Positions 4,500-48,772 of a stretch of 64,000 nucleotides of DNA are shown one piece after another (positions within the stretch are counted from its first letter, which is position 1; every line of letters begins with the position of its first letter). The stretch covers positions 62,001 through 126,000 of the IMG/VR virus record IMGVR_UViG_3300025012_000027. One strand, given 5' to 3'. The position numbers and the translations under genes are program-made. A model generated the notes under the pieces. The model was not told the DNA's origin. It saw only the letters and a program-made list of their open reading frames with translations, and ran no database searches.

Positions 4500-4522
4500 A
4501 GTGCTACACCGAGACTTATACA

Positions 4523-6610: not shown

Positions 6611-6612
6611 CA

Positions 6613-7680: not shown

Positions 7681-7686
7681 TACAAT

Positions 7687-10563: not shown

Positions 10564-10569
10564 TGTGAT

Positions 10570-11427
10570 ATGAGTAAACTAAAAATATCAGAACTATTCT
10601 ATTCGATTCAAGGAGAAGGACGCTATATGGGGGTTCCTAGCGTATTCTTAAGAACCTTTGGTTGCAATTTCAAGTGTGCTGGATTTGGGATGCCTAAAGG
10701 CGAATTGAGTTCGGACGCCGACGAGGTAGCGCATACTCATACCGCGATTGAAGCGTTTCAAACGTATAACGATTTGCCGTTAGTGAAAACCGGTTGCGAT
10801 TCATTTGCATCTTGGCATCCTGCATTCAAAGATCTTTCCCCTATGCTGACTGTGGATGCTATCGTTGATAGAGCCGTCGATCTACTACCACATAAAGAAT
10901 GGCGAGACGAGCATCTTGTTATCACAGGTGGCGAACCTTTGTTGGGGTGGCAGCGGTCTTACCCAGAACTTCTAGCACATCCTAAAATGCGTTCTTTGAA
11001 GGAACTCACATTCGAGACTAATGGCACTCAGCCGTTGAATGGTTTTTTCAAAACCGTGTTATACAGTTGGACAGAAGCCCGTACATATGACTCACTGACG
11101 TTTTCAGTTAGTCCAAAGTTAAGTTGCTCTGGAGAACCTCGTAGTGTAGCAATCAATCCCGAAGTGGTGGTTGATTATGAATTGTATGGCTACACTTACT
11201 TGAAGTTTGTAGTCGCAACTGAAGATGATATAGCAGAAGCGCTTGAAGTGACTGATATTTATCGAAAAGCTGGGTTCAAAGGCCCTGTTTATTTGATGCC
11301 AGTTGGTGGCGTGGAATCCGTATACACGCTAAATAACAGAACTGTTGCCCAGGCAGCAATCAAACATGGGCTTAGGTATAGCGATAGGCTACAAGTTCCT
11401 TTATTCAAGAATGCCTGGGCAACATGA
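10570..11427 (+). CDS. queE: 7-carboxy-7-deazaguanine synthase (radical SAM)
   Basis: ELFYSIQGEG, FLRTFGCNFKC...CDS, VITGGEPLL, FETNGT, SVSPKL, RYSDRLQ. Confidence 0.95.
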   Translation: MSKLKISELFYSIQGEGRYMGVPSVFLRTFGCNFKCAGFGMPKGELSSDADEVAHTHTAIEAFQTYNDLPLVKTGCDSFASWHPAFKDLSPMLTVDAIVDRAVDLLPHKEWRDEHLVITGGEPLLGWQRSYPELLAHPKMRSLKELTFETNGTQPLNGFFKTVLYSWTEARTYDSLTFSVSPKLSCSGEPRSVAINPEVVVDYELYGYTYLKFVVATEDDIAEALEVTDIYRKAGFKGPVYLMPVGGVESVYTLNNRTVAQAAIKHGLRYSDRLQVPLFKNAWAT

Positions 11428-11618
11428 TGAAAACTCGTGACGAAATTATCACGGACATGTGTTATGCTTGGCGACATGACTATGGCTTGGATAAATGGCC
11501 TGACGAGTTTAGTTTTAGGTCTGGTATGACCCCGGCTGAGAGAACTATCCTTTGGAACCAGATGGCTCGCCTATTTGATGATAATATATCCCCTTTTATG
11601 GAGTTTAATCAAGAATGA
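11424..11618 (+). CDS. Hypothetical protein
   Basis: ATGA-coupled on both sides. Confidence 0.55.
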   Translation: MMKTRDEIITDMCYAWRHDYGLDKWPDEFSFRSGMTPAERTILWNQMARLFDDNISPFMEFNQE

Positions 11619-12115
11619 ATCAACCAGTATCGTATAAGTATACATCAACTAAAGAATACATCGACGCATTCCCATGTGCGTATCGACAATGGCGAGCAGA
11701 CAGTCATTGCAATTCGATCCACGGATACAGTTTTTCCATGAAATTTTACTTTGGGACCAATGATCTCGACGTGCGAAATTGGGCCGCTGATTATGGTGGG
11801 TTGTCAGACCTTAAGAAAATTCTGGAGAGTCAGTTCGATCATACGTTGCTAGTGAGTTCAGATGATCCCGAGTTGGAAACTTACAAACTTCTTCAGGAAA
11901 AGAAGATGGCAAAGCTCACAATTCTACCTAAACTTGGGTGCGAAGCTCTCGCGGATATGCTGTATAAATACGTCAATGGCGTTTACATTCCAGATTTGTG
12001 GGGTCCTGGAGAATCCAACCGACTTTGGTGTCATCGAGTCGATGTGCGAGAAACTCGGAGCAACATGGCATTTCGAGAAGGCCATCGCGAATGGAACGAA
12101 GATCTGTTCGCGTAA
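11615..12115 (+). CDS. queD: 6-carboxy-5,6,7,8-tetrahydropterin synthase
   Basis: HCNSIHGY, DYGGL, FDHTLL, GCE, VRET. Confidence 0.92.
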   Translation: MNQPVSYKYTSTKEYIDAFPCAYRQWRADSHCNSIHGYSFSMKFYFGTNDLDVRNWAADYGGLSDLKKILESQFDHTLLVSSDDPELETYKLLQEKKMAKLTILPKLGCEALADMLYKYVNGVYIPDLWGPGESNRLWCHRVDVRETRSNMAFREGHREWNEDLFA

Positions 12116-12142
12116 ATATACATTCAGACAATAAAGGAACAT

Positions 12143-12457
12143 ATGAATACTAGACTATTAACCCCGCCAGAATACTGTCCGGATGCTCTAGCAACGGACG
12201 TTGGTTGGATCAACCCAAAGAATGGTGAGATCTTAGTGATCGTAAAGGATTTGCGGAATCGTCTCACATTACAGGCAGCCGAACTCGCAAAGGCGTTGGC
12301 GACAATGGAAGCCGTTCCAGAACTTGAGCCAACCACGGTTGATGATGTTGAAGTCGTCAATCAGCCCGAGACCTCATCTAGTGATGCAGTAGAAACCACC
12401 AACAAACCAGGGCGTCGCGGGCGTCCTCGTAAAATGACTTCAAAGGAGACAATTTAA
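12143..12457 (+). CDS. Hypothetical protein with C-terminal AT-hook-like RRGRPRK
   Basis: AAGGA RBS and TAAATA at 12113; GWINPKNGEILV motif. Confidence 0.6.
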   Translation: MNTRLLTPPEYCPDALATDVGWINPKNGEILVIVKDLRNRLTLQAAELAKALATMEAVPELEPTTVDDVEVVNQPETSSSDAVETTNKPGRRGRPRKMTSKETI

Positions 12458-13137
12458 TGAATTATGGTAAGTGTGACCCAGAATTGGGTAAGCGAGTTCG
12501 AGCGTATTTGATGTTGCAGGGGGTCGAGTCTCCAATCGACTATTCTGTGTATGACAGTACGACCGCTGCATCTAAAATTGAGGTGGTAGAACATCACATG
12601 AAAGCTGCTCTTGAAATCATGGGGTTCGACCTCACAAACGACTCTGTTCAAAACACCCCCAAGCGAATCGCGAAGATGTGGGTATCCGAGATCATGAGTG
12701 GCCTCGACTACAACAACTTTCCAAAGATTATGACGTTTGAGAACAAGTTCAAAGCATCTGGGATGGTTGTTGAGCGTGATGTTAAGTCAATGAGCCTGTG
12801 CAGCCATCACCTAGTTACTATTGACGGCGTTGCTACTGTTGCATACATTCCTAAAGAGCGGGTTATTGGTCTTAGTAAGATCAATCGTGTAGTTGACTAT
12901 TTTTCCAGACGCCCTCAAGAAGCCGAGCGTTTGACGTTGCAGATCTTCCATGCTCTTGAGTATTTGTTGGGAACTGAAGATATCGCCGTGTTCTTGACAG
13001 GCACGCACTTCTGCGTTCGTTCACGTGGCGTGCAGGATATCAATTCAAGCACATCAACCGTTAAGTTGGGTGGCGGATTCTTGAACGATCCAATGCTGCG
13101 CAAAGAATTCTACGACGTGGTGCATTCAAAGGCGTAA
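12457..13137 (+). CDS. folE: GTP cyclohydrolase I
   Basis: TPKRIAKM, SLCSHHL, IGLSKINR, RRPQEAERLT, HFCVRSRGV. Confidence 0.97.
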   Translation: MNYGKCDPELGKRVRAYLMLQGVESPIDYSVYDSTTAASKIEVVEHHMKAALEIMGFDLTNDSVQNTPKRIAKMWVSEIMSGLDYNNFPKIMTFENKFKASGMVVERDVKSMSLCSHHLVTIDGVATVAYIPKERVIGLSKINRVVDYFSRRPQEAERLTLQIFHALEYLLGTEDIAVFLTGTHFCVRSRGVQDINSSTSTVKLGGGFLNDPMLRKEFYDVVHSKA

Positions 13138-13149
13138 TTAAGCCACCTT

Positions 13150-13175
13150 GATCGGCAGAAATGCCGATCTTTTTT
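13150..13175 (+). terminator. Rho-independent terminator after folE
   Basis: GATCGGCA-GAAA-TGCCGATC followed by T6. Confidence 0.85.
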
Positions 13176-13186
13176 GACTATTCATA

Positions 13187-14515
13187 ATGAAAACTTTCAA
13201 TAAGCGTATTGGCTTCATCATCTCGGCTCAGCATCTTATTCCTCACGGCGGCATCGGACAATTCGCCAAGGGGTTGATTGAGATGCTAGACGAGTATCAA
13301 ATAGATATCATCCTTGATAAGGCTCCAGCATCATCTGAGTTCGTTGAATTATTGGCCGGTAAAGACAACGTTAAGCTAATATACCCCCCACAGCCGCTTT
13401 CGAGCCAAAAACATACTAAGGTACATGCCTTCAGCGAAACGTTGAATCTAGAGCGGATCATTAACTTTCGCGATAGTTTGATGCTTGCTCTGCAGACGCA
13501 GATCTACGATACTATCATTATCAACACGCCTGAAGCACTATTTTCTACATATGCTCTAGGCATTCAAAAGTTCGTTCAAATCGTATTCTATACGCATAAT
13601 GAGAATCTAGTGTTCAAAGATGCTTCATTCGCGGGGGTGTTCAATGACAGCTATGACGAGATCATAGGACAGAGTATGCGATCTGATGGGATCACCGTGG
13701 GAACTCAGACACCCAGAAACCTCGATGAGTTGGTAGGCATCAAAAGTAAGGCATGGTTACCTATGCCCATCCCTGAAAGGGATCTACTCACTCCAAGCAT
13801 TATCGAAAAATCTGGGGTGCTGTTCATCGGTCGATGGGAAGAACGAAAGAACCCCAAAGAGTTCCTGCGGCTGATTGAAGAAACTGGATTGCCTGCAAAG
13901 GTTATGACGAACGAAAACGGTGCTAAGAGTTTTGAAGCAGCTCTTAGTAAGTTGGGCGTGCCGTATGAGATCAAAGCATCTATCATCGGTAAAGAAAAGG
14001 TAGATTTCATTAAGTCAGCGAAAGTGTTCTATATGCCATCAAAGAGCGAGAGCTATGGGTTTGCTCTGATGGAAGCAATTGGACACACGCATTCAATCGT
14101 TCTCGAAGAATATCCGTGGCATAAGAACTTTGACCCGACGTTTATTAACGTATCGGCCAAGAAAGATGTTGCATCTTTGACAAAACGATTGTATAATACG
14201 CCGGTACATACGGCGAATATTGATTATGTACGATCACTAGACGATCAGTGTAAGTCTATCTGGGTTGACTTCATTGAGTCGTTTAACCCAAAGCAATCAA
14301 CCTCAAATTCGGCTAACATTACCAAACATGATGAAGTGCTATATGCAGACTTCATATCATCGTTGGGTCGGTTTGCTAGTATCGAGGATGTAATTTCTGT
14401 GCTAAGCAATCGGCATAAATTCACAGTGTCACATTCCAAAGAAGGAACCTTTCTCTCAAAGAGTGGAAAGACGATTCAAAAGTCTGAAGGCATTTCATTC
14501 GACGACATATTCTAA
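13187..14515 (+). CDS. GT-B glycosyltransferase (GT4-like)
   Basis: HGGIG, VLFIGRWEERKNP, MPSKSESYGFALMEA (E-x7-E). Confidence 0.88.
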   Translation: MKTFNKRIGFIISAQHLIPHGGIGQFAKGLIEMLDEYQIDIILDKAPASSEFVELLAGKDNVKLIYPPQPLSSQKHTKVHAFSETLNLERIINFRDSLMLALQTQIYDTIIINTPEALFSTYALGIQKFVQIVFYTHNENLVFKDASFAGVFNDSYDEIIGQSMRSDGITVGTQTPRNLDELVGIKSKAWLPMPIPERDLLTPSIIEKSGVLFIGRWEERKNPKEFLRLIEETGLPAKVMTNENGAKSFEAALSKLGVPYEIKASIIGKEKVDFIKSAKVFYMPSKSESYGFALMEAIGHTHSIVLEEYPWHKNFDPTFINVSAKKDVASLTKRLYNTPVHTANIDYVRSLDDQCKSIWVDFIESFNPKQSTSNSANITKHDEVLYADFISSLGRFASIEDVISVLSNRHKFTVSHSKEGTFLSKSGKTIQKSEGISFDDIF

Positions 14516-15763
14516 ATGATAAAAGATATACATTACATCGCGTCCGGAATGTCCTACACGAGAATCAATTCTCCGAGGAACTACGAGAACCCAGAAAATT
14601 TGCAGTTCATTAATGATACTTTCAGAAAGATCAGTGATAGTGCAACCAGACATGACTTCGGCATACTGTTCAACGCATTCACTGAATCTGCTTTTGGCGA
14701 ACGGTTCTCGAAGTATAATGGGCACAAATTTACACACGCCGACTCAGGTGGCTTGCAAGTAATTACTCAAGGTAAGACGATCACGCCGGCATTGAAAGAC
14801 GCCGTATATGCTGTTCAAGCTAAGTGGTCTGATCTGGGGATGTGCTTCGATGAGATTCCAATCGGAATGACTGGAACAACTTCGGGTAGAAATGACGTAA
14901 CGAATCGTTGGTATAAGTCAGACGATCTGGAACACTATGCTAGGCTGACTGGTCGAAACATTGCTAGACAGATTGAAGTTTACCATAAACTAGATTCAAA
15001 GTGTAAGCCAATTCTCATTGCTCAAGGAAACTGTTATGACAGTTACATGCGCTGGGTAGATTATATTATGGATGAGATTCCTGCATCCGACCGTCAATAT
15101 GTCGGCGGTGTTGCTATGGGAGCTGCTGCTCTTGGCACAGGCACCCTCGAAGACATCGAGCGAGCATTTATCTTCTCACAATTGCAGATCGACGTCAAGC
15201 ATCTACACGTGCTGGGAGTTGGTTCTGTAAAACGACTATATCCGTATTTGGTGTTCCAAGATTCGGGTCTGTATAAAGACATCACATTATCATATGACAG
15301 CACTAGCCATACTTCTGGAGGCGAACTTGCAAACTATTACACCGAAGATTTCAAACGTCTTTCGTTTACTCGTCAGTATTCGAGACACTATGAAAAGATT
15401 TTTAATGAGATTGCTGGGTTCATTGACGTTTCTGATTTGACGCCTCGAGACTTTCATGAGATCATGAACAGTGGATACACAAAGTATGTCGAGGAATTGA
15501 ATAAAAAAGACTTTGACTTTTTGCGTTGTCGTTTAGGTATTATTTTCAGAATGATCCATAATTTTATCAACCACGTTGAACACGTTATGGCAAGTAAAGA
15601 GAACATGATTGAAGATGCGATGCAGCATAACCTGCATGGTCAGATTAAGTTCTTGTATGGAGTGAAAGATAAGAATGACTTCGATGCTTGGAACTCGCAT
15701 TTCAAACGTACCGTTAAGTCAAATCGTGTGCAATCTGGACAATCTTTAGAATTGGAGTTTTAA
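14516..15763 (+). CDS. dpdA: DNA 7-deazaguanine transglycosylase (TGT fold, DpdA2-like)
   Basis: ADSGGLQ, CFDEIP, IAQG, HLHVLGVG, SYDSTSH; no C-terminal CxCxxC; clustered with queE/queD/folE. Confidence 0.85.
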   Translation: MIKDIHYIASGMSYTRINSPRNYENPENLQFINDTFRKISDSATRHDFGILFNAFTESAFGERFSKYNGHKFTHADSGGLQVITQGKTITPALKDAVYAVQAKWSDLGMCFDEIPIGMTGTTSGRNDVTNRWYKSDDLEHYARLTGRNIARQIEVYHKLDSKCKPILIAQGNCYDSYMRWVDYIMDEIPASDRQYVGGVAMGAAALGTGTLEDIERAFIFSQLQIDVKHLHVLGVGSVKRLYPYLVFQDSGLYKDITLSYDSTSHTSGGELANYYTEDFKRLSFTRQYSRHYEKIFNEIAGFIDVSDLTPRDFHEIMNSGYTKYVEELNKKDFDFLRCRLGIIFRMIHNFINHVEHVMASKENMIEDAMQHNLHGQIKFLYGVKDKNDFDAWNSHFKRTVKSNRVQSGQSLELEF

Positions 15764-15764
15764 T

Positions 15765-16124
15765 ATGGGAATCAAAACATACATCAAAGTTAGAACTGAG
15801 TTTGAAGGGTTTCATAGCTACCCAGGAGCCGGTAGCATAAGCCCAGCTATCAAATTCCTGGAAGATCGGCATCGCCACATGTTCAAAGTCGAGGTTAAGA
15901 TCTCTGTGACACATGATGACCGAGAGTTAGAGTTTTTCTTGACCAAGTGGGCGCTCGAAGATTTCCTGAATAGAAGAGAACTCAATAACAAGAGTTGCGA
16001 GATGATTGGGCGTGATATCTTGAACGATCATCTGCTGATAGCGTATGGCGGTGATCGATATTATGAAGTCATTGTGTCTGAAGACGGCGAGTCTGATGGT
16101 ATTGTAGAATATACTCCGGAATAA
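15765..16124 (+). CDS. dpdL: QueD-like T-fold protein, DpdL type (proposed CDG decarboxylase)
   Basis: FEGFH, LEDRHRHMF (LxxxHRHxF signature as recalled for DpdL), DRELEF, SCEM, VSEDGE. Confidence 0.7.
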   Translation: MGIKTYIKVRTEFEGFHSYPGAGSISPAIKFLEDRHRHMFKVEVKISVTHDDRELEFFLTKWALEDFLNRRELNNKSCEMIGRDILNDHLLIAYGGDRYYEVIVSEDGESDGIVEYTPE

Positions 16125-16128
16125 TACT

Positions 16129-17220
16129 ATGTCAAAACTTATCATTGTCCCCATTGAACCGATCGAATCTCGGTATACCTCTCAGTGGTATAAGTTCCTG
16201 CCAGGTTTTATTAAAGAAAATACGTCGTTTGATTCAATCGTCCATCTAGAGATTGACAAAGAAGTTCCTGAAAACACTTCTGGTGGGTTCTTTAACTTCA
16301 ATTTCACGTGCGAGTATAAGGCCGCGCAATTCATCTCATTATCTGAGATGGTTAAACGTGGTGAGATACAAGACGGTGATGTGATCTTCTATACAGATTA
16401 CTGGAACCCAACGGTTCATATGACTCGATACATTCTCGATCTAAATGGAATTCGTGCAAAGATCGTTGGATTTGCTCACGCAGGAGACTGGGACCCAGCT
16501 GATATTCTACATCAAAAGCTAGTTAATAAACACTGGTCTTGGACTACTGAGATGTCATTGCATCAGGCATATGATCAGATTTATTTCTCGACGTACTTTG
16601 CTCGACAGTTGTATGCTAATAATCTTGGGGCAGATCTAGTATATGCTGCAGGTGCAGACCTCATCGTAACAGGGTTCCCGATGGAATATTATGATGAAGT
16701 TCTCCCATCATACTGGGATCTTGAATCACCTGTTAATAAAGAAGACTTGATAGTATTCCCTCATCGAATCTCAGATGAGAAAAACTATAAACTATTCAAG
16801 ATACTTGAGCGTAGGTTGCCGCAATACAAATTCGTTGTGGCGATGGAAGTGTGTAAAACGAAAGATGCGTATCACGATCTATTGTACCGAAGCAAAGTAG
16901 CATTCTCGGCTGCATTGCAAGAAACAGGCGGCATAAGTATGGGCATCGAGTCTCTACGAGCAGGCTGTATGACTATAGTTCCTGATCGACTATCATATGC
17001 TGAAATCTTTGACCAGTGGGATTTGAAGTTTGCCGGTGATGTTGCGGATTACGTCGTCACGGAAGATAATGATCCATGTGTCGATATCCTAGTCGATACT
17101 ATAGTGAAGGCATTCGAAACCTGGAACATCGAGGTTATCAAGAAACAACATGATTTGAATTACGCAAAGTATTTCACTGGCACAATTCTTTATGCTGCAT
17201 TGGATACGTTCAATGAATAA
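16129..17220 (+). CDS. GT-B glycosyltransferase, GTDC1/QTMAN-like
   Basis: HAGDWDP, IVFPHRISDEK, KDAYHDLL, SAALQETGGISMGIE, VPDRLSYAEIF. Confidence 0.8.
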   Translation: MSKLIIVPIEPIESRYTSQWYKFLPGFIKENTSFDSIVHLEIDKEVPENTSGGFFNFNFTCEYKAAQFISLSEMVKRGEIQDGDVIFYTDYWNPTVHMTRYILDLNGIRAKIVGFAHAGDWDPADILHQKLVNKHWSWTTEMSLHQAYDQIYFSTYFARQLYANNLGADLVYAAGADLIVTGFPMEYYDEVLPSYWDLESPVNKEDLIVFPHRISDEKNYKLFKILERRLPQYKFVVAMEVCKTKDAYHDLLYRSKVAFSAALQETGGISMGIESLRAGCMTIVPDRLSYAEIFDQWDLKFAGDVADYVVTEDNDPCVDILVDTIVKAFETWNIEVIKKQHDLNYAKYFTGTILYAALDTFNE

Positions 17221-40166: not shown

Positions 40167-40373
40167 ATGAAACACCTTATTTGGAAATATCGCTTTGCAA
40201 TGTATCTCGTACAATATGGGGCATTGTTCGACGATGGTTGGGACGCTGCTGAGAATTGGGTTAATGCCGATCTACCACTTGGCGTTCCGGAAACTGCGGC
40301 ACTCGTCGAACGGGTGTTTATGCTAGGTCCAGACTTGGCAGACTCACTAATTATTAATTTTGAAAGACCTTGA
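40167..40373 (+). CDS. Hypothetical protein
   Basis: Tiled ORF. Confidence 0.45.
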   Translation: MKHLIWKYRFAMYLVQYGALFDDGWDAAENWVNADLPLGVPETAALVERVFMLGPDLADSLIINFERP

Positions 40374-40768
40374 ACATGCACATGCCAATTGTCAAACTAG
40401 AAGTTGAGGGGATGAAGTATGCTATGTATACTGCACTTTCCGAACATGCGGCTCAAATTGACGAGAATATCAAGCAATCCGTCGATGCATATTGTACTTC
40501 GGGTAACATCGCAAGCGTAATTGACCAAGAAGTTCGAATCGTATTAGACGCGGCAATCAAGGAAGAGATTCGAAATTTCTTCAGGTATTCGACGCCTGGA
40601 AGACTAGCAATTCGAGAGGCGATCGAGCATCATCTTAACGAAGTGTATCCAGTTTCGAGTGAGTCTGAGTTGGTGAAATGTGTATACTGCGGGTGTTCGG
40701 ATGGAGAGTTGGCCCCGTATGGTCCAAAAGGCGAAATGGTTTGTTTAGCATGTTTGGAGATATCATGA
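40370..40768 (+). CDS. Hypothetical protein with C-terminal CxxC...CxxC finger
   Basis: Ends KCVYCGCSDGELAPYGPKGEMVCLAC. Confidence 0.55.
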   Translation: MNMHMPIVKLEVEGMKYAMYTALSEHAAQIDENIKQSVDAYCTSGNIASVIDQEVRIVLDAAIKEEIRNFFRYSTPGRLAIREAIEHHLNEVYPVSSESELVKCVYCGCSDGELAPYGPKGEMVCLACLEIS

Positions 40769-41034
40769 AATGTGTATATTGCGGCTGCTCGGACGACGAA
40801 TTGCGGCCATATGGTCCGAATGGCAGTATGGTGTGTTTTGCCTGTGCGATGTTGACTCCTGATCGAGAAGAAGAAACAAAGAAAAACTTCATATCGCAAT
40901 TGGAAACCATTTCAGGAGTAGCTGTAATTGGGTCAGACGCTGGGCCATACCCGCTTGAACACAATCCCGTTATGGCTAGTATTGTCAAAGACCTTCTAGA
41001 ATTCGATTCTAGTGCCAAGCACAGTGTCCAATGA
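40765..41034 (+). CDS. Hypothetical protein with N-terminal CxxC...CxxC finger
   Basis: GGAG RBS, ATG 40765; MKCVYCGCSDDELRPYGPNGSMVCFAC. Confidence 0.65.
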   Translation: MKCVYCGCSDDELRPYGPNGSMVCFACAMLTPDREEETKKNFISQLETISGVAVIGSDAGPYPLEHNPVMASIVKDLLEFDSSAKHSVQ

Positions 41035-41072
41035 AACAGACGCTCATAGACGGTTATATTGGAGAATAGAGT

Positions 41073-41288
41073 ATGTGGTACAGTATAAAGAAGTTATTTA
41101 ATACTAGTGGTGTCAAAGCTGATCGCAAACGTATCAAAGATGTGATCCTTAGTTTGCGCACTAGGGCTAGCATCCGTAGGCAGATCGCCACTCGCAAAAG
41201 CGTACAGGAAGGTAAGCCGGACAGAATCTGCGACTTGCTTGAAGAAGCAGCAAACGAACTTGATCGGTTACTTAAAATTCATTATTGA
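41073..41288 (+). CDS. Conserved phage hypothetical protein
   Basis: RASIRRQIATRKSVQEGKPDRI.DLLEEAA. Confidence 0.65.
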   Translation: MWYSIKKLFNTSGVKADRKRIKDVILSLRTRASIRRQIATRKSVQEGKPDRICDLLEEAANELDRLLKIHY

Positions 41289-41293
41289 TAGTG

Positions 41294-41323
41294 CTTGACT
41301 GGTTGTCAAGATGGTTGTATAAT
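41294..41323 (+). promoter_or_regulatory. sigma70 promoter with an inverted repeat over the -35
   Basis: TTGACT(41295)-17 nt-TATAAT(41318); CTTGAC-N5-GTCAAG at 41294-41310. Confidence 0.75.
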
Positions 41324-41359
41324 ACGATTTTAGCGAACATTTACAAAGAAGGATATATC

Positions 41360-41995
41360 ATGGAACAGATGTCGGTTACTCGTGGATTAGTTGAATTGAA
41401 ACGTTTGGATGCCCGGATCAAGTCCGCGGTGTTGTCCGGCCAATTCGTTGGTCGAACTGTTGGTAAAAATAACTTTCGCAAGGTTGTTGGGGTGGCCGAT
41501 TCAGTTGAGGCAGTTTCTGCAAAGATTCAATCATCGTTCGATTCCGTCGATTCGTTGATCGCAAATCGTGAGCGGATCAAGTCAGCTATTGTGTTGTCTA
41601 ATGCAACCACACAGGTCACGGTTCTCGGTCGTGGTATGACTGTCGCTGAAGCGATTGAGTTGAAATCATCGGTTGATTATCGTCAAGCATACTTGAATCA
41701 GTTGCGCCAACAGCTAACTCGTGAATCAGTCGAGGTCGAGAAGGCAAATGCCGCATTGGATGCGACGATCGAGGTGTCGTTAAATAACATTTATGGGGCT
41801 GAGAAATCCAAGATTGCTGAAGATACATATGCTTCCGTAGCTAATCCTCAGAAAAATCAAAAGGAGGCTGCGTTGCTGGACCCGATGGGTATCTCGGCTC
41901 GTATCCAAAAGCTGACAGAGGACATCTCGAACATTGAATCTGAATTGGACTTCACTCTGTCTGAGTCAAACGCTCGGACAATGATCTCCGTTTAA
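41360..41995 (+). CDS. Coiled-coil protein (DUF6847/DIP1984-like)
   Basis: AAGGA RBS; MSVTRGLVELK, SNATT.V, MTVAEAIELK, LLDP, ELDFTLSESNART. Confidence 0.7.
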   Translation: MEQMSVTRGLVELKRLDARIKSAVLSGQFVGRTVGKNNFRKVVGVADSVEAVSAKIQSSFDSVDSLIANRERIKSAIVLSNATTQVTVLGRGMTVAEAIELKSSVDYRQAYLNQLRQQLTRESVEVEKANAALDATIEVSLNNIYGAEKSKIAEDTYASVANPQKNQKEAALLDPMGISARIQKLTEDISNIESELDFTLSESNARTMISV

Positions 41996-42000
41996 ATTTT

Positions 42001-42255
42001 GTTGCTTGTCATAGTCGAACGAACGAAATATGACTGTTCTTTGGGGGCGAGAACTAAAAGCACCCCCGCCATAACTTTATATGTTAAGAACGGAAACTTA
42101 ACGGTCAACGTTTAACGGTCAAGAGTTATCGGTCAGAGGTCAACGATTTTTATATCAACCTTGAAAGTTTAAACTCCAAAGGTCTTTTAAATCCTGAATC
42201 TGGTTCTTGGTTAGTCAGCCACCGTGAGTACCCCAGGCTGACTATGATGAGCAAC
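42001..42255 (+). ncRNA. Candidate structured non-coding RNA with phased heptamer repeats
   Basis: 16-bp end-closing stem 42001-16/42240-55 (two G-U pairs) then U-tract; internal pseudoknot; 11 heptamers; no ORF in track. Confidence 0.7.
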
Positions 42256-42451
42256 TTTTTCTTTTTATAATATGTTTTTAGCTTACGTGACACTGCTAGT
42301 TAAAGGTGAACAAACTGTGTTCGCCATCATCGGTAAAGATGAATCACAAATCTTGGAACGATCATTGAAGTATGGAACAGATCCAACGATCGTTTCTGAA
42401 TTGTATTGTTTGGGGGATGACTGGCGATACTAAATATAGTAAAGGATCTAT

Positions 42452-42715
42452 ATGACATATCAAAACCACTCTATCACCGATGCATACAAGCGTATGCGAA
42501 CACCAATCTTTGAATCGGCGGTTATGCCATATAACGGTGATCGCGTTGCTCGAAATCTGCGCAATCCACGATATTTAGCTGCTATCCATGGATTTCATGA
42601 TGTGGATGTTAGTTCACTCCCAGACGACCACCAGCATAAACAGATTTATGATCAGTTCACTGACGCCGACAAAGCCGAATACGCTGAGTGGAAACCAAAG
42701 TTCGACCAGCGGTAA
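42452..42715 (+). CDS. Late hypothetical protein, possible internal head protein
   Basis: TAAATA at 42431, AAGGA RBS; SITDAYKRM...IFE leader. Confidence 0.6.
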   Translation: MTYQNHSITDAYKRMRTPIFESAVMPYNGDRVARNLRNPRYLAAIHGFHDVDVSSLPDDHQHKQIYDQFTDADKAEYAEWKPKFDQR

Positions 42716-42732
42716 CATTTTACGCAATCAAC

Positions 42733-42752
42733 AATCCCGGTTTCCCGGGATT
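42733..42752 (+). terminator. Hairpin, probable terminator
   Basis: AATCCCGG-TTTC-CCGGGATT after stop; weak U-tract. Confidence 0.45.
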
Positions 42753-42806
42753 CGTCATCTGTGAAAGATATTGTTGCATTCTCGTCCAAGCATGTTATAA
42801 TACGGC

Positions 42807-43058
42807 ATGTCTTACAAAATGCACGTTACTGGAAATCGAGTCACATTCGCCTTGGCAAAGCAATTCGCAAAGGATCATGGCTTCATATTGATGCCAGCGT
42901 ATGTTCATGGAACTTGGTTTTGTTTTGACATTGGTCGCAAGCCACACTATCCAGATGCCGCAAAAGCAGCAAAGGCATTCTTCGTAGATGTCATTGTCGA
43001 GACTACCAAAGAACGTGGGTTGCGGGTTGAAAGATTTGTTATGGACTTTCATTCTTAG
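42807..43058 (+). CDS. Hypothetical protein
   Basis: ATG 5 nt after TATAAT. Confidence 0.55.
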   Translation: MSYKMHVTGNRVTFALAKQFAKDHGFILMPAYVHGTWFCFDIGRKPHYPDAAKAAKAFFVDVIVETTKERGLRVERFVMDFHS

Positions 43059-43098
43059 AACTTTTATGTTATAATACTGTTAACAAGGAAACTATATT

Positions 43099-43395
43099 AT
43101 GTCAAAGATTACGCGAGCAACAGTCAAATCTTTTGTTAAGAAAAATGCCGATAAGCTGTTGATCAGCACGGTATCAGATTTTGACGGTCAGGTGGATGGA
43201 TTAGTTCGATGCGCAGACCAATCATTTGGGTCGGCCGTAAAAGCAGATTACTTTCACGATAACAATCTCGGAATACATGGTATTTGGTTGGTCAGTGGTA
43301 GTCGAAATTATTTCACCGAATACTCAAAGCAAGGATTGATCGGGATTGAGGTTAGTAATTGCTGTGGTAGCTTTATTGTCGCTATCAAGGAGTGA
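43099..43395 (+). CDS. Conserved phage hypothetical protein
   Basis: KITRATVKSFVKKN...FDGQVD...GIWLV..SR...NCCG. Confidence 0.7.
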   Translation: MSKITRATVKSFVKKNADKLLISTVSDFDGQVDGLVRCADQSFGSAVKADYFHDNNLGIHGIWLVSGSRNYFTEYSKQGLIGIEVSNCCGSFIVAIKE

Positions 43396-43589
43396 CCATG
43401 CAGCAGATTGTATTGACTCGGGAGCAGATTTTTAAGTTAACTGTGTTCGCATCACAGCTTCCAGAGGTTAACGAGTTCACGATCGAGTCGGATTGCGCGT
43501 CTGGGATAGGTGAGCGAATTCTTGCTAAATGCGATCTATTCGCAAAAAACGACGCGACACTCGATATCAGCGAATATGATAAATTTTAA
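43392..43589 (+). CDS. Hypothetical protein
   Basis: SGIG...DISEY; AAGGAG RBS. Confidence 0.6.
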   Translation: MTMQQIVLTREQIFKLTVFASQLPEVNEFTIESDCASGIGERILAKCDLFAKNDATLDISEYDKF

Positions 43590-43608: not shown

Positions 43609-44457
43609 ATGTTTTTAGTTATTGTTAGTTTGTTGGGGTCGTTGGTCCTGGCGGTTGGATTATACGCAGTTCTTGACTTTCGAGCGTTGTATTCTGGAAT
43701 TGCGGGGATTGCTGTGTTCGTGATTGCTTTGTTGGTGGGCAGCTTTACCGTTATCAGCGCTGGTCACACTGGAGTACAGGTTACTCTGGGAGAAGTTAAT
43801 ATCGTTCCGTTGACTGAGGGGGTTCATTTAGTTAACCCGATTAGCTCGGTGAAAGATGTCGATGTAAGGCTGCAGAAAGCAGAGCTGAAAGGAGCCAATG
43901 CTGGGACCAAAGATTTGCAGGTGGTGCATACTGATATCGTGGTGAATTACCGATTGAATGCACCAAAAGTTCCTCATATCTACAAAGAATTTGGACTCAA
44001 CGTTGATGAGAAAGTTCTTGGCCCGGGCATCAATGAAGCGTTCAAGAGCGTCACTGGACACTTTACCAGTGAAGAATTGATCACGAAACGAGATATCGTG
44101 AGTCAAGAAATTCTCGAGCATTTGAAGACTAAGATGGCTCCGTTTAATATCGATGTTAGTGGGATCAGTTTGGTAAACTTTGGATTCAGTCCGGAGTATC
44201 AGAAAGCCATCGAAGCCAAGGTTATTGCTACACAATCAAAGTTGAAAGCTGAACAGGATCTTGCACGTATTGAAGTTGAGGCGCGTAGTCGAATTGCTCA
44301 AGCTAAGGGCGAAGCTGAAGCGATCAGTATCCAAGCTCAGGCGATTCAATCAAATGGCGGGGCTCAGTACGTGCAACTTCAAGCCATCGAAAAGTGGAAT
44401 GGGCAGCTTCCAACGACTGTCTTGAGCGGTAGTGTCCCGTTTGTAAATATCAAATAA
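43609..44457 (+). CDS. SPFH/band 7 (prohibitin-like) membrane protein
   Basis: Two TM helices, TKDLQVV, AIEAKV, AKGEAEA, IEKWNGQLP. Confidence 0.92.
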   Translation: MFLVIVSLLGSLVLAVGLYAVLDFRALYSGIAGIAVFVIALLVGSFTVISAGHTGVQVTLGEVNIVPLTEGVHLVNPISSVKDVDVRLQKAELKGANAGTKDLQVVHTDIVVNYRLNAPKVPHIYKEFGLNVDEKVLGPGINEAFKSVTGHFTSEELITKRDIVSQEILEHLKTKMAPFNIDVSGISLVNFGFSPEYQKAIEAKVIATQSKLKAEQDLARIEVEARSRIAQAKGEAEAISIQAQAIQSNGGAQYVQLQAIEKWNGQLPTTVLSGSVPFVNIK

Positions 44458-45730: not shown

Positions 45731-45832
45731 TGGTTGGTTGGGCTCTTAAATAGGCTCTACGGAATAACGTGTTGAATTCATGATTTAGGTTTATACTCAT
45801 AAAACGGATTAACGTGTAGAAAAGGATTCGAT

Positions 45833-46480
45833 ATGACAAAAGAACGCTTCGGGGTGGCTGAACTCATCCTTCGGGAGGTTTGCGAGATGGACCCCGATGA
45901 CCCGGAGAAGAGCGACACCATTTGTATTGATGTGTCCACCTTGAAGCGGGTTATTGACGCCCACATTAGTGAGACGGACGAGCGCCACGGGCTGGACAGC
46001 GACACTCGCGTCTGCTTCTATGAGCAGGATTTTTACGTCCTGTCGAACTTCAGCTCGTTCAATCTTGTTGGCGGGTTCTATGGAAGCCCCCAGTCTGATG
46101 GCATCACATTCGCTACCAGTGAGCACGCCTATCACTGGCATAAGTTCCAGCCGACCGACAGCGATTTGGCCGATGCCATTCTGTTCGCGCCGTCTGCTCA
46201 CGACGCCTTTAAGCTTGCCGAGCGCAACAAGGTAAATCGTTGGGACCGATGGGACGAATTCAAGGTGGAAATCATGCGCGACATCCTGCGAGCCAAAGTG
46301 ACCCAGCACGAATACGTGCGCCGAAAGCTCCTGGCGACAGGCGACCGCGAACTGGTTGAGAACTCGTGGCGCGATGACTTTTGGGGGTGGGGACCAACCC
46401 AGGATGGCGCAAACATGCTGGGCAAGCTTTGGATGGAAATCAGAGCCGAAATCCGCGCAAAGGATACCCCTGACAATTGA
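45833..46480 (+). CDS. NADAR (YbiA-family) hydrolase
   Basis: LSNF, TSEHAYHWHKF, AKVTQH, LLATG, LVENS..D.FWG, GANMLGKLWMEIR. Confidence 0.92.
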   Translation: MTKERFGVAELILREVCEMDPDDPEKSDTICIDVSTLKRVIDAHISETDERHGLDSDTRVCFYEQDFYVLSNFSSFNLVGGFYGSPQSDGITFATSEHAYHWHKFQPTDSDLADAILFAPSAHDAFKLAERNKVNRWDRWDEFKVEIMRDILRAKVTQHEYVRRKLLATGDRELVENSWRDDFWGWGPTQDGANMLGKLWMEIRAEIRAKDTPDN

Positions 46481-46483
46481 TGG

Positions 46484-47950
46484 ATGACTGACATCCTCGA
46501 CCTTAAAGGCTGGACGGTGCTCTCCAAGTCTCAATCCGATGGTGAATACGTGATTGAGGCCGAGTACACCATTCAGCCCGCCAACTGCCCAAAATGCGGG
46601 GTTGTTGACACTCCATACAAGCATGGCGTAAAGCCCATCAGGTATCGCGACAGCCCCATCAGGGGTTCCGCTGTGGTCATCCTGGCCAACGTCCAGAGGT
46701 ACAGGTGCAAGCACTGCAAGGAGACGTTCCTTCAGCCATTGGAAGGCATTTACCCTGATATGAGGATGACACAGCGCTGTGTTGAGTACATTGAAACCCA
46801 GTGCCTTCGGGACACCTTTGTTCGGATTGCCGAGCATATTGGCTGTGATGACAAGACTGTAAGGACCGTTGCTGGCACTTACATTGACTCCATGAATGCC
46901 AAGTTCAAACCCTGGCTTCCTGAGTGGCTGGGCATTGATGAAACACAGATTGACGGCGAACTCCGATGCATCATCACTGATGTGGTCAACCGTAAGCCGG
47001 TGGATATGCTGCCCAATCGTGACAAGGTGTCGGTCACGGCATGGCTGTACCAGTTCAAAGACCGGCGCACCGTCAAGGGATTGGCCATTGACATGTGGCG
47101 TCCATATAAGGATGCAGCCCAAGCAGTGTTCCCCGGCCTGCCTGTAGTCATTGACAAGTTCCATGTAGTCAAGATGGCCAACAAGGCTTTGGAGGACATT
47201 CGCATTGCCCTTGCCAAAGACCAGCCCAAGGCAGTCGGCAAGGACTGGATGAGGCGCAAGGCACTGCTGCGGATGCGGTACAAGAATCTGGATGAAAAGG
47301 GCCGGTTTGCCCTCAGCATGTGGCTGGACAACGAACTGGCTCTCAAAGTCGCTTACGACCTCAAAGAAGCCTTCTATGACATCTACGATGCCCCTACCAA
47401 GGCAGAAGCTGGAACCCGGCTGGATGCTTGGCGCAACTCCATTCCCGCAACCATGAAGAAGGGGAAAAAGAGCTTTGCGCCCCTCATTACCGCCACGAAG
47501 AACTGGCGAGAAGAGATTCTTGCCTTCTTTGACCACCCCATCAGCAACGGGTACACAGAGGCTCTGAACGGCGTTGCCAAGGTAACCAATAGGCAAGGCA
47601 GGGGCTACAGCTTTGAAGTCCTCAGAGCCCGCGTTTTGTTCTCCAAGATTTCCAGAGTCCCTGTTACTGAAGAGGATGAGGTAACGGAAGTAGAGATGCC
47701 AGAACCCGAACAGGTTGAGGTAGTCATCCATAACCCAGCCCGTACCGTGCGCCACATGCTGCTTTACAAGTACAAGAACAGGTGTCAGTCCTGTCTTGGA
47801 GTGTTTCCCCCATCCGAGCTTTATGTCGCTCGAATGGGTGTCTTCCTTGAGGATGAACCAATGAAAAACAGGACGTTGATGTGTGCCCCTTGCAAAGAGC
47901 GTTTCCACACAGATGGAATTAAGCATGTTCATTCAACTTCCACACCTTAA
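46484..47950 (+). CDS. ISL3-family transposase with C-terminal Cys-rich extension
   Basis: CPKCG...RYRCKHC, LGIDE, IDMWRPY, VIDKFHVV, SNGYTEALN, GRGYSFEVLRARVL. Confidence 0.95.
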   Translation: MTDILDLKGWTVLSKSQSDGEYVIEAEYTIQPANCPKCGVVDTPYKHGVKPIRYRDSPIRGSAVVILANVQRYRCKHCKETFLQPLEGIYPDMRMTQRCVEYIETQCLRDTFVRIAEHIGCDDKTVRTVAGTYIDSMNAKFKPWLPEWLGIDETQIDGELRCIITDVVNRKPVDMLPNRDKVSVTAWLYQFKDRRTVKGLAIDMWRPYKDAAQAVFPGLPVVIDKFHVVKMANKALEDIRIALAKDQPKAVGKDWMRRKALLRMRYKNLDEKGRFALSMWLDNELALKVAYDLKEAFYDIYDAPTKAEAGTRLDAWRNSIPATMKKGKKSFAPLITATKNWREEILAFFDHPISNGYTEALNGVAKVTNRQGRGYSFEVLRARVLFSKISRVPVTEEDEVTEVEMPEPEQVEVVIHNPARTVRHMLLYKYKNRCQSCLGVFPPSELYVARMGVFLEDEPMKNRTLMCAPCKERFHTDGIKHVHSTSTP

Positions 47951-47995
47951 TCCGCAGAGCCCTTAAATAAAAGAGAATACTTCAGGGACCATACT

Positions 47996-48772
47996 ATGTC
48001 ACAAGATACACTCGTAACCGAATCCGCCATTGCATATATTATGATGCAAGAATCAATTTTGCTTGAATCTCGATTAGATTACCTAAAGGCAAATACTCCT
48101 CCATTGTCTACGGATCATGATACTACGGCTATTCATAAAGATACACCAAGCATCATCCAGCACTTTGCGGATAATGCTGATCCAACCCCAAACAAGCAAC
48201 GCACGCAATACATCGTTGGATTGTATCGCGCTAAGAAGATTCGACAAGAAGATGCGCCTAGAATTAAAGAAGCTTTGTCGTCATTTGAAAAATACAAACA
48301 CAAATTAGATCCATCAGAGAAACAACTCACCGTGTCTGCATATCCAACGGTTGCTAGTATTGAAGATAAAATGGTCCCGCATGTGGGCACCATGGCAACA
48401 AAACGTGAAGCTGAGCGCAATCTAAATCAACCCGGCCACGAGTTGAAGTACGATGATGAGAACATCTCGATATATCATTTGAAAGACAAAGAGACTTCCC
48501 AGAATTTGTATGGTGGCGGTCATCAACGTGGCGGTACCGGTACATCATGGTGCACTGCTGCTAGATCCAAAGATTGTATGTTTGATCAATATGCAAAAGA
48601 TGGACGATTACACGTATTGCATGATAAAAAGACTGGTAGTGTGTATCAATACCACACTAAATCTGCGTCGTTTATGGATGCTAAAGACAACGAGATTTCA
48701 CCGGAAGATTTCAAAGCAATTGCTCCAAGTTTTCATAAGGCCATTCTTTCTAATCCCGATCTGTTAAAATAA
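47996..48772 (+). CDS. Late hypothetical protein with GTSWCTA motif (PcfJ-like), possible internal head protein
   Basis: TAAATA at 47964; ILLE leader; ADPTPNK, EDAPRIK, WCTA, YQYH...FMDAKD. Confidence 0.65.
   Translation: MSQDTLVTESAIAYIMMQESILLESRLDYLKANTPPLSTDHDTTAIHKDTPSIIQHFADNADPTPNKQRTQYIVGLYRAKKIRQEDAPRIKEALSSFEKYKHKLDPSEKQLTVSAYPTVASIEDKMVPHVGTMATKREAERNLNQPGHELKYDDENISIYHLKDKETSQNLYGGGHQRGGTGTSWCTAARSKDCMFDQYAKDGRLHVLHDKKTGSVYQYHTKSASFMDAKDNEISPEDFKAIAPSFHKAILSNPDLLK

What the first reader, a model, noticed from the sequence alone, without database searches (positions are those of the whole stretch)
41294..42265. Candidate undescribed RNP: coiled-coil protein plus ~255-nt RNA with 11 phased heptamer repeats
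Seen: a dedicated sigma70 promoter, a 211-aa coiled-coil gene, then 5 nt after its stop a non-coding unit closed by a 16-bp stem (GTTGCTTGTCATAGTC / GACTATGATGAGCAAC) and a U-tract. The two non-Watson-Crick positions are G-U on this strand, as expected for an RNA. Inside is an H-type pseudoknot (GTTCTT/GAGAAC, with loop GGGGG pairing to CCCCC at 42063-67). A phased run follows from 42100: AACGGTC AACGTTT AACGGTC AAGAGTT ATCGGTC AGAGGTC AACGATT, an 8-nt unit, then AACCTTG AAAGTTT AAACTCC AAAGGTC. Known: ring proteins such as TRAP wrap RNA by binding one short repeat per subunit. The protein resembles the DUF6847/DIP1984 family as I recall it, function unknown. Inference: an 11-12-subunit ring binds the repeats of its cis-encoded RNA; possible roles include decoy, scaffold or RNA-repair partner.
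Basis: partly seen in the sequence, partly recalled or inferred. Interest (0 to 1): 0.9.

Follow-up and report, generated by a model that had tools for sequence, protein, structure and literature searches.

The report
New protein-RNA module near tRNA arrays
A small helical protein gene is always followed by its own 250-400-base folded RNA in many large phages (including the model phage T5) and in some bacteria, usually among tRNA genes. Neither part has a described function, so this looks like an undescribed RNA-protein pair connected with translation.

Summary
In the window, a sigma-70-type promoter, a 211-aa gene (41360-41995) and a 255-nt unit (42001-42255) lie as described. The unit is closed by a 17-bp helix and holds an H-type pseudoknot and phased heptamers.

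The same gene-plus-RNA pair occurs in T5-like, Otagovirus, Bastille-like, PVP-SE1-like, Lactococcus 949-like, Clostridium and jumbo phages. It also occurs in chromosomes of Bacillus, Lysinibacillus, Brevibacillus, Paenibacillus and filamentous cyanobacteria.

The closing helix, the pseudoknot and a 3' helix keep their pairing while their sequences change. G-U pairs outnumber A-C by 56 to 6, so the element is an RNA made from the gene's strand. Arrays of 5-11 UYAAAGU heptamers in 7-nt phase are found across the family.

Every genuine RNA found by a DNA pattern alone had the gene upstream. The module is tied to tRNA arrays: tRNAs start 4-17 nt after it, or sit inside it.

The protein is a remote structural relative of DIP1984/DUF6847 (PDB 3kdq), whose function is unknown. 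Rfam 15 has no match, and no paper was found.

The RNP reading is plausible but unproven. The proposed 11-12-subunit ring is untested.

The parts
41295..41323 (+). sigma-70-type promoter-like site, TTGACT-17 nt-TATAAT
   Evidence: 11 of 12 matches, the best site in 40500-43500. Consensus match only; transcription was not shown.
41360..41995 (+). gene for a 211-aa helical protein (phrog_1491; T5.085 family; remote DIP1984/DUF6847-like fold)
   Evidence: phrog_1491, E 4e-59, full length; invariant SNAxTxVxIxGxxMTVAEAIERK block; AF2 pLDDT 92; 3kdq is the best PDB fold match
42001..42255 (+). the whole structured RNA unit, 255 nt, the shortest of the 36 compared
   Evidence: 3'-domain model hit at 42172-42253, the only hit in the 64-kb window
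42001..42017 (+). P1 closing helix, 5' arm, followed by the GAAC/GAAAAC-type junction
42036..42067 (+). H-type pseudoknot: S1 42036-42041 / 42049-42054; S2 42043-42047 / 42063-42067
   Evidence: A pseudoknot at the same place, 15-20 nt after P1, with at least 10 bp in 28/36 relatives against 10% of shuffles.
42098..42185 (+). array of phased heptamers (family consensus U-Y-A-A-A-G-U; here mostly UUAACGG / UCAACGU types)
42186..42238 (+). conserved 3' domain: the UUUUAAAUCC motif and helix P3a (42193-42196 with 42234-42237), ending in GGCUG
   Evidence: P3a 98% paired in 88 distinct sequences, strong covariation
42239..42255 (+). P1 closing helix, 3' arm
42256..42266 (+). T-run after P1, a possible intrinsic termination signal together with P1 or the local hairpin 42212-42220 / 42236-42244
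   Evidence: It was not called by the terminator scan, because the P1 loop is too long for that scan.

Best explanation
This is a conserved two-part module. A roughly 210-aa helical protein (T5.085 / phrog_1491 family, DIP1984-like fold) is encoded next to a 255-400-nt structured RNA. The RNA is transcribed with the gene from its own promoter and starts a few bases after the stop codon.

Shown here: the RNA has a fixed architecture. It has a 13-21-bp closing helix P1, an A-rich junction, an H-type pseudoknot and a variable region that tolerates whole tRNA inserts. It then has two runs of UYAAAGU heptamers in 7-nt phase and a conserved 3' domain. The RNA and the gene are found only together.

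Inferred: the RNA is a stable RNA. Its 3' end, and the ends of any internal tRNA, are cut by the tRNA-processing enzymes. The protein is its dedicated partner, so the two form an RNP that probably assembles in cis as the protein leaves the ribosome next to P1. The heptamer array would be the multi-site platform for several protein copies.

Inferred from context: the RNP serves the translation apparatus under attack or stress, that is during phage takeover, against tRNA-targeting defences, or in the cyanobacterial translational-stress response. Its biochemical activity is unknown.

The confidence given (0.5) is for the RNP statement as a whole. That a real, conserved structured RNA is genetically coupled to this gene I hold at about 0.95.
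For: Coupling, gene to RNA:
- About 50 non-identical phage loci all carry the RNA.
- A 3'-domain covariance model trained on 32 phage sequences hits the expected position on the + strand in 56 of 82 other sources at E <= 0.01. It hits 18 of 22 of the remainder with filters off. There are no comparable hits elsewhere.

Coupling, RNA to gene:
- A DNA-only pattern gave 56 stretches. 31 look like the real RNA: 28 have the full gene 230-354 nt upstream, 2 have its C-terminus at the cut end of the locus, and 1 is too short to judge. The other 25 lack both the helices and the gene.

RNA nature and strand:
- In P1, 91.6% of 463 cells are paired, against 29-51% when slid. There are 4-6 pair types per position, and 56 G-U against 6 A-C.
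- In P3a, 98% are paired, 0 of 500 shuffles reach the observed score, and 51 and 47 double changes occur at two pairs.
- The pseudoknot is conserved in position with unrelated sequences.

Repeats:
- The best autocorrelation lag is 7 or 14 in 29/36, and lag 3 is negative, so the region is not coding.
- 276 heptamer sites were found, with spacing of exactly 7 nt in 113 cases.

tRNA link:
- 34 of 52 loci have same-strand tRNAs within 2 kb.
- tRNAs begin 4-17 nt after P1 in six loci and sit inside the RNA in L011, L057, L065 and L212.
- The module lies inside a 28-tRNA array beside an RNA ligase, an EF-Tu paralog, a PARG-like protein, an HNH nuclease and Dps in Dulcicalothrix. It heads the tRNA array in PVP-SE1.

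Protein:
- A confident model and a conserved block at the hairpin joining helices 2 and 3, with conserved R70, K74 and K102.
Against: - No direct evidence that the protein touches the RNA.
- The protein is mildly acidic (median pI 5.7, net charge -2) and has no known RNA-binding domain.
- Heptamer sites are only slightly less paired than the rest of the RNA in thermodynamic folding (0.44 against 0.38).
- In Bacillus, Lysinibacillus, Brevibacillus and Limnospira the module sits alone among housekeeping genes with no tRNAs nearby. The tRNA link is therefore frequent but not obligatory.
- One locus has two RNAs for one gene, and one has 380 nt between gene and RNA.
- Transcription and RNA ends have not been measured anywhere.
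Confidence: 0.5

Rival explanations
1. The RNA works on its own, as a self-assembling or catalytic RNA like the large phage- and tRNA-associated RNAs GOLLD and ROOL. The protein is only a co-transcribed, separately acting member of the same toolkit, or a folding chaperone.
For: The RNA has a complex conserved fold and the protein has no recognisable RNA-binding domain. The protein is acidic. One locus has two RNAs per gene. tRNAs embedded in a variable region are also a feature recalled for GOLLD (from my own knowledge).
Against: The linkage is strict in both directions and the spacing is fixed: P1 usually starts 5-35 nt after the stop. This holds across phages and bacteria whose proteins are only 30-40% identical, which is hard to explain without a physical or regulatory interaction.
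Confidence: 0.2
2. It is a cis-acting 3' UTR. The structured region stabilises the gene's mRNA against 3' exonucleases, or the protein binds the heptamers to autoregulate its own mRNA. There is no trans function.
For: The RNA begins a few bases after the stop codon and shares the gene's promoter. Terminators or T-runs follow P1.
Against: 250-400 nt with a pseudoknot, a conserved 3' domain and tolerated internal tRNAs is far more than protection needs. Internal tRNAs would cut the UTR off the mRNA. Inserts of 50-380 nt between gene and RNA are tolerated.
Confidence: 0.1
3. It is a selfish or immunity two-gene cassette, like a type III toxin-antitoxin pair or a defence or anti-defence pair. A harmful protein is held in check by a repeat-containing RNA.
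For: It is a compact autonomous cassette with its own promoter. It is found in phages, in tRNA-array islands and as isolated inserts between unrelated chromosomal genes. The RNA has repeats and a pseudoknot, as ToxI RNAs do (from my own knowledge). DIP1984-type genes are labelled 'septicolysin' on Acinetobacter plasmids; this is a label only.
Against: There is no PADLOC hit. The fold is unlike ToxN/AbiQ-type nucleases. The gene order is the reverse of type III systems and the repeat unit is 7 nt, not about 35. Cyanobacterial proteins are 70-100% identical across genera, which looks like housekeeping-type constraint. Pore-forming-toxin fold hits are not significant (probability 0.3 or less).
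Confidence: 0.1
4. It is a DNA-level element, such as iterons of a replication origin or a centromere-like site made of 7-bp heptads, bound by the adjacent protein.
For: Contiguous 7-bp heptad arrays are DNA sites for some ribbon-helix-helix regulators (from my own knowledge). The module lies in early or replication regions of several phages.
Against: 56 G-U pairs against 6 A-C in P1 and the covarying pseudoknot and P3a helix are selection on one RNA strand, not on duplex DNA. The tRNAs inside and abutting the element are all on the same strand.
Confidence: 0.02

Closest known systems
GOLLD and ROOL RNAs (large ornate RNAs of phages and prophages, often next to tRNA genes)
   Same: A large, intricately folded non-coding RNA carried by phages and by bacteria. 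It is associated with tRNA genes, has a variable region that can hold tRNAs, and its function is unknown.
   Different: There is no match to their Rfam models, or to any other, even at E <= 1-10. This RNA is smaller (255-400 nt). It has an obligatory adjacent protein gene and a 7-nt repeat array. GOLLD and ROOL have no known dedicated protein.
TRAP-trp leader, HutP-hut mRNA, CsrA-CsrB: oligomeric proteins that read arrays of short RNA repeats
   Same: It has an array of short, phased, A-rich repeats in an RNA. HutP sites also recur every 7 nt (from my own knowledge). This is the working model for how the protein could bind.
   Different: The protein fold is a helical hairpin bundle, not a TRAP, HutP or CsrA fold. 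The repeats are embedded in a large, closed, pseudoknotted RNA. Binding has not been shown.
DIP1984 / DUF6847 proteins (PDB 3kdq, Pfam PF20935; sometimes labelled 'septicolysin')
   Same: It is the best structural match (Foldseek probability 1.0, TM 0.65 on the target) and shares an N-x-T-N-x-V-T ... G-M-T-x-A-x-A block.
   Different: The phage-type protein is about 60 residues longer. It scores below Pfam and NCBIfam thresholds. DIP1984 itself has no known function and no reported RNA partner. Whether DUF6847 genes have a downstream RNA was not tested.
Type III toxin-antitoxin systems (ToxIN, AbiQ/antiQ)
   Same: A protein plus a repeat-containing, pseudoknot-forming RNA forms a compact mobile cassette, also carried or mimicked by phages.
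   Different: The gene order, repeat length (7 against about 35 nt), protein fold and single closed RNA architecture all differ. There is no PADLOC hit.
Long tRNA arrays ('L-arrays', trn operon) of cyanobacteria and phage tRNA clusters
   Same: The module is embedded in or abuts such arrays. It shares their neighbours (HNH nuclease, RNA ligase, Dps, ADP-ribose-processing enzymes), as described for L-arrays in PMC8421152.
   Different: That paper mentions unnamed hypothetical genes embedded in the arrays but no structured RNA. The module also exists away from any tRNA gene.

Membership tests
PHROG phrog_1491 (annotated 'tail fiber protein') | Full-length match to the family HMM | tested here: met
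   E 4.3e-59, residues 1-211 on profile positions 2-209 of 211
PHROG phrog_1491 (annotated 'tail fiber protein') | Tail-fibre role, meaning a structural-module context | tested here: not met
   In T5 the gene lies in the early region between an exonuclease gene and the tRNA region. In PVP-SE1 and cyanobacteria it lies inside tRNA arrays. In Bacillus and Lysinibacillus chromosomes it lies between a permease, an MFS transporter and two-component system genes. The fold has no fibre features. The label looks like a propagated annotation error.
Pfam DUF6847 (PF20935) / NCBIfam DIP1984 family | Score above the curated HMM threshold | tested here: not met
   There is no hit for the window protein. 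Only 3 of 33 relatives hit PF20935, and weakly (best E 0.0032).
Pfam DUF6847 (PF20935) / NCBIfam DIP1984 family | Same fold as the solved member 3kdq | tested here: met
   3kdq_C is the top PDB hit, E 6.2e-3, probability 1.00, TM 0.49 on the query and 0.65 on the target.: family profile against 3kdq, E 0.026, over the conserved block.
Any Rfam 15 family (including GOLLD, ROOL, tmRNA, RNase P, 6S, SRP, Y RNA-like) | Covariance-model score at or near the gathering threshold | tested here: not met
   There is no hit in the window, in T5, phiPsa374 or Bobbio, or in 10 bacterial copies. The only matches were tRNAs and sub-threshold noise. ARAGORN finds no tmRNA.
TRAP-like ring protein with repeat RNA | Beta-sandwich subunit forming an 11- or 12-mer | tested here: not met
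   The predicted fold is helical and there is no TRAP-like PDB match. The oligomeric state was not testable with the monomer-only prediction available.
TRAP-like ring protein with repeat RNA | Phased short repeats in the bound RNA | tested here: met
   7-nt phase, 5-11 sites per RNA. Binding itself was not tested.
Type III toxin-antitoxin | Tandem RNA repeats of about 35 nt upstream of an endoribonuclease toxin gene | tested here: not met
   The RNA is downstream of the gene, the repeat unit is 7 nt, and the fold is not ToxN-like. There is no PADLOC model hit.
MITE / insertion-sequence remnant (terminal inverted repeats) | Multiple copies with the same inverted repeats, and target-site duplication | tested here: not met
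   The window has a single copy. The arms differ completely between relatives while staying complementary, with G-U pairs. That is RNA-helix behaviour, not transposase-site behaviour.

The most novel reading that the evidence does not exclude
The RNP is a tRNA-docking scaffold. Each heptamer carries a codon-like A-N-N core: AAA or AAG in most relatives, AAC in this window, where UUAAC is the exact complement of the GUUAA of a tRNA-Asn anticodon loop. These cores would pair with anticodon loops, so one particle holds several tRNAs. It could shield them from anticodon nucleases, or present cleaved or modified tRNAs to the RNA ligase, ADP-ribose-removing enzymes and EF-Tu paralog encoded around it. 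That would make it a new component of the translation apparatus shared by phages and bacteria.
Probability: 0.07. Interest if true: 0.95.

Novelty: categorically new. Interest (0 to 1): 0.86.

Why it matters
If the RNP reading holds, a widespread RNA-protein pair has gone unnoticed. The protein family has 1,726 clusters at 50% identity with E <= 1e-30 and appears in at least 740 deposited phage genomes. One of those is T5, among the best-studied phages, where the gene has been mislabelled 'tail fiber'.

The module sits at the centre of tRNA arrays. The purpose of these arrays (codon supply, counter-defence against tRNA-cleaving immunity, survival of translational stress) is under active debate. 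The finding supplies a concrete, genetically tractable new player in E. coli/T5, Bacillus and cyanobacteria.

For RNA biology, it adds a new large structured RNA class with a dedicated protein, a clean pseudoknot and an unusual 7-nt repeat array. It is well suited to cryo-EM.

Caveat: unnamed fragments of this RNA may already sit in bulk catalogues of predicted phage RNA structures (PMC10690425). I could not check this.

Tried and rejected
- MITE or IS remnant: rejected. There is a single copy, and the arms covary with G-U pairs.
- tmRNA, tRNA-like or any Rfam family: nothing found.
- DNA similarity of the window region to deposited phages: none. The family is visible only at protein and RNA-structure level.
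- Pfam, NCBIfam and PADLOC gave no usable annotation for the protein.
- An unconstrained pseudoknot finder did not separate real from shuffled sequence. Only the position- and loop-constrained version did.
- RNAalifold on the 3' domain recovers only helix P3a. An inner helix P3b is only 68% paired in the model-fitted alignment, and the hairpin P3c could not be put in one register. I leave both as tentative.
- Single-sequence folding energy is only marginally better than shuffles (z = -2.26).
- Predicted accessibility of the heptamers is only slightly raised.
- Link to Anabaena all4315 (chloramphenicol-induced, with homologs linked to tRNA arrays, PMC8421152): it could not be established. No Nostoc or Anabaena 7120 protein appears among close relatives, and two papers give no sequence detail.
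- Literature searches for T5.085, DUF6847, phrog_1491, DIP1984 and septicolysin, plus several topic searches, found no description of the module.
Full report
**What is in the window**

A strong sigma-70-type promoter match (TTGACT, 17 nt, TATAAT; 41295-41323) precedes an AAGGA ribosome-binding site. A 211-codon ORF follows (ATG 41360, stop 41993-41995). Five bases after the stop, a 16-nt arm (42001-42016) pairs with 42240-42255. The two non-Watson-Crick positions are G-U on the + strand. With the flanking pairs, the helix is 17 bp. A T-run follows (42256-42266).

Inside the unit, GUUCUU (42036-42041) pairs with GAGAAC (42049-42054). The GGGGG in its loop (42043-42047) pairs with CCCCC (42063-42067), giving an H-type pseudoknot.

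From 42098 there are phased heptamers. Tandem Repeats Finder sees only 3.1 copies. Autocorrelation peaks at lags 7 and 14 (z = 4.4 and 4.6), and a family-derived matrix marks 8 sites.

The arm sequence is not repeated elsewhere in the window beyond chance. Folding energy alone is unremarkable (z = -2.26). The window is part of a 216-kb IMG/VR phage contig.

**The protein family**

The protein matches phrog_1491 over its full length (E 4e-59). It matches nothing in Pfam, NCBIfam or PADLOC above threshold.

tblastn finds it in 740 deposited phage genomes:
- T5 and relatives (T5.085)
- Otagovirus, such as phiPsa374
- Bastille-like Bacillus phages
- PVP-SE1-like phages
- Vibrio T5-like phages
- Lactococcus 949-like phages
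- Clostridium phiCD211
- Erwinia and Ralstonia jumbo phages

A profile search finds 1,726 clusters (at 50% identity) with E <= 1e-30, almost all 200-215 aa.

The alignment shows an invariant SNAxTxVxIxGxxMTVAEAIERK block and a C-terminal VDFxLSESNAxT motif.

AlphaFold2 gives a confident model (pLDDT 92) of long helical hairpins with short strands at residues 3-5, 85-94 and 208-210. Its best PDB neighbour is 3kdq, the Corynebacterium diphtheriae protein of unknown function (probability 1.0, E 6e-3). The family profile also hits 3kdq (E 0.026). Three of 33 members weakly hit Pfam DUF6847.

The 'tail fiber' label is contradicted by every genomic context examined.

**The RNA is conserved with the gene**

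In T5, phiPsa374, Bobbio, Bcp1, AM4, PVP-SE1 and phiCD211, the gene is followed by 360-640 nt without an annotated gene.

In 36 non-identical loci from IMG/VR, a simple stem finder recovers a 13-21-bp helix closing 255-403 nt. The helix starts 0-84 nt (typically 5-35) after the stop codon. The 14 loci it missed also carry the element when read by eye: they have a bulged P1, an insert, or an upstream terminator.

All share the following features, in order:
- A P1 5' arm ending in CG, followed by AAAAC
- A pseudoknot
- A variable stretch
- A-rich heptamers
- A ..UCGAUAAAAUCC.. motif
- A helix whose 3' strand ends in GGCUG, running straight into the P1 3' arm

**Evidence for structure and strand**

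- P1: 91.6% of 463 cells pair, against 29-51% when the partner is slid by 1-3 positions. Nearly every position shows 4-6 different pair types. G-U pairs outnumber A-C by 56 to 6. This is the signature of an RNA read from the gene's strand.
- P3a: in 88 distinct sequences, 98% are paired. The two central pairs show AU/UA/GC/CG in 34/31/11/8 and 15/18/40/14 sequences. None of 500 shuffles reaches the observed covariation, and slid controls collapse.
- Pseudoknot: it lies at a fixed distance (15-20 nt) after P1. One with at least 10 bp is found in 28/36 elements against 10% of shuffles, with unrelated sequences in different phages.
- Heptamers: the 7-nt period is family-wide. The best lag is 7 or 14 in 29/36, with mean z = 3.1, and lags 3-5 are negative, so the region is not coding. 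The unit consensus is U-Y-A-A-A-G-U, with 5-11 sites per RNA. Of the adjacent site pairs, 113 are spaced exactly 7 nt, 36 are spaced 14 and 10 are spaced 21.

**How tight is the linkage**

A covariance model of the 3' domain was built from 32 phage sequences. Among 82 sources not used for training, it finds one hit in each of 55 sources and two in one (L207) at E <= 0.01. All are on the + strand at the expected distance after the gene. The 64-kb window has a single hit, at 42172-42253. With filters off it finds 18 of 22 further loci.

Conversely, a DNA pattern that knows nothing about the protein gave 56 stretches in IMG/VR. Of these, 31 have the P1, P3a and junction signatures:
- 28 have the complete gene 230-354 nt upstream.
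- 2 have its C-terminus at the cut end of the locus.
- 1 is too short to tell.

The other 25 lack both the helices and the gene and are chance matches. I found no RNA without the gene.

**Beyond phages**

The gene and the RNA also occur in bacterial assemblies: the Bacillus pumilus group, B. paralicheniformis and B. haynesii, Lysinibacillus, Solibacillus, Brevibacillus, Paenibacillus, and many filamentous cyanobacteria. Cyanobacterial proteins are 70-100% identical across genera.

In Bacillus, Lysinibacillus, Brevibacillus, Paenibacillus and Limnospira, the flanking genes are ordinary cell genes: an amino-acid permease, an MFS transporter, a two-component system, a GyrI-like protein and PadR/RND efflux genes. 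They are not phage genes. Rfam has no match for these copies either.

**The tRNA connection**

Same-strand tRNA genes lie within 2 kb in 34 of 52 phage loci. In L017, L019, L024, L035, L038 and L057 a tRNA starts 4-17 nt after the P1 3' arm. In L011, L057, L065 and Lyngbya PCC 8106 (L212), a tRNA sits inside the RNA's variable region.

In PVP-SE1 the module heads the tRNA array. In Dulcicalothrix desertica it lies in the middle of a 28-tRNA array. Its neighbours there are an HNH nuclease, an Alr0857-family protein, a PARG-like protein, an RNA ligase, an EF-Tu paralog and a ferritin/Dps. This is the 'L-array' neighbourhood that Santamaria-Gomez et al. linked to survival of translational stress (PMC8421152).

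In the window itself, an SPFH protein and a NADAR (ADP-ribose-processing) protein lie 1.4 and 3.6 kb downstream.

Internal tRNAs imply one of two things. Either the RNA is cut by RNase P and RNase Z and works as two pieces held together by P1, or the variable region is a neutral landing site. This is inference.

**Interpretation**

Shown: there is a new, deeply conserved structured RNA, genetically inseparable from a DIP1984-like protein and enriched in tRNA arrays.

Inferred: the two form an RNP, with the heptamer array as a multi-site platform. My estimate is about 0.5 for the RNP and about 0.3 for heptamers as the protein sites. For an 11-12-subunit ring it is at most 0.1, since site numbers vary from 5 to 11 and the fold is not TRAP-like.

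The start of P1 within a ribosome footprint of the stop codon suggests cis assembly, or competition between translation and folding. This is also inference.

Against the RNP reading: the protein is mildly acidic (median pI 5.7), although conserved R70, K74 and K102 flank the invariant hairpin. The heptamers are only slightly less paired than the rest in silico.

Rivals are an RNA-only function, a cis 3' UTR, a toxin-antitoxin-like cassette and a DNA-level repeat element. They are weighed in their own sections. The DNA-level reading is essentially excluded by the G-U asymmetry.

**Novelty**

No Rfam 15 family matches. Ten literature searches found no description of the gene family or the RNA. 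Two genome-language-model preprints and the 10,006-csRNA phage catalogue do not discuss it. Unnamed fragments of it may be in that catalogue.

I rate it as a new RNA class with a dedicated protein. It deserves a direct test in T5.

Noticed in passing
window 46484-47950 (+), with GC 0.53 in 46001-48000: There is an ISL3-family transposase, 63% identical to the insertion sequence annotated in Burkholderia phage Bcep22. It sits in a GC-rich patch of an otherwise roughly 43% GC phage genome, so it is an IS inside a phage. The 707-aa ORF on the opposite strand (45809-47932) is probably its antisense shadow.
   Followed up: partly
window 45833-46480 (+) and 43609-44457 (+): A NADAR-domain protein (ADP-ribose processing) and an SPFH/Band-7 protein lie just downstream of the module. 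The cyanobacterial copy has a PARG-like gene next to the RNA, and a slipin gene is in the Anabaena TrcR regulon (PMC10272220). This may be coincidence.
   Followed up: partly
window 40370-40768 and 40678-41034 (+): Two neighbouring, partly overlapping ORFs both contain a CVYCGCSDxELxPYGPxGxMVCxAC motif. This is a duplicated zinc-ribbon-like module with no family match.
   Followed up: no
L011 2738-2814; L057 2713-2787; L065 2697-2770; L212 2230-2301: Whole tRNA genes are inserted inside the variable region of the RNA, on the same strand. L083 and L027 carry tRNA-like remnants there that ARAGORN does not call.
   Followed up: partly
L207 2120-2421 and 2450-2779 (Parabacteroides MAG): One gene is followed by two tandem, divergent copies of the RNA, each with its own closing helix.
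   Followed up: partly
L006/L007 about 2640-3010; L162 2130-2714: In L006 and L007, about 380 nt (with a small ORF) separate the gene from the RNA. In L162 (Desulfogranum) the RNA appears interrupted before its 3' domain, possibly by an insertion at the contig end.
   Followed up: no
L224 (Dulcicalothrix desertica PCC 7102) 4088-16781: A 28-tRNA array carries embedded genes: an HNH nuclease, an Alr0857-family protein, this module, a PARG-like protein, an RNA ligase, an EF-Tu paralog and a ferritin/Dps. It looks like a translation back-up or repair island.
   Followed up: partly
about 740 GenBank/RefSeq phage records, e.g. NC_005859.1 43505-44143: Homologs are widely annotated as 'tail fiber protein', including T5.085. 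Nothing in their context or predicted fold supports this, so it looks like a propagated annotation error.
   Followed up: yes
NC_005859.1 43140-43496, minus strand (L001 3139-3495): Phage T5 carries an unannotated 357-nt copy of the RNA between T5.085 and the promoter of T5.084. It has a 21-bp closing helix containing five G-U pairs.
   Followed up: yes
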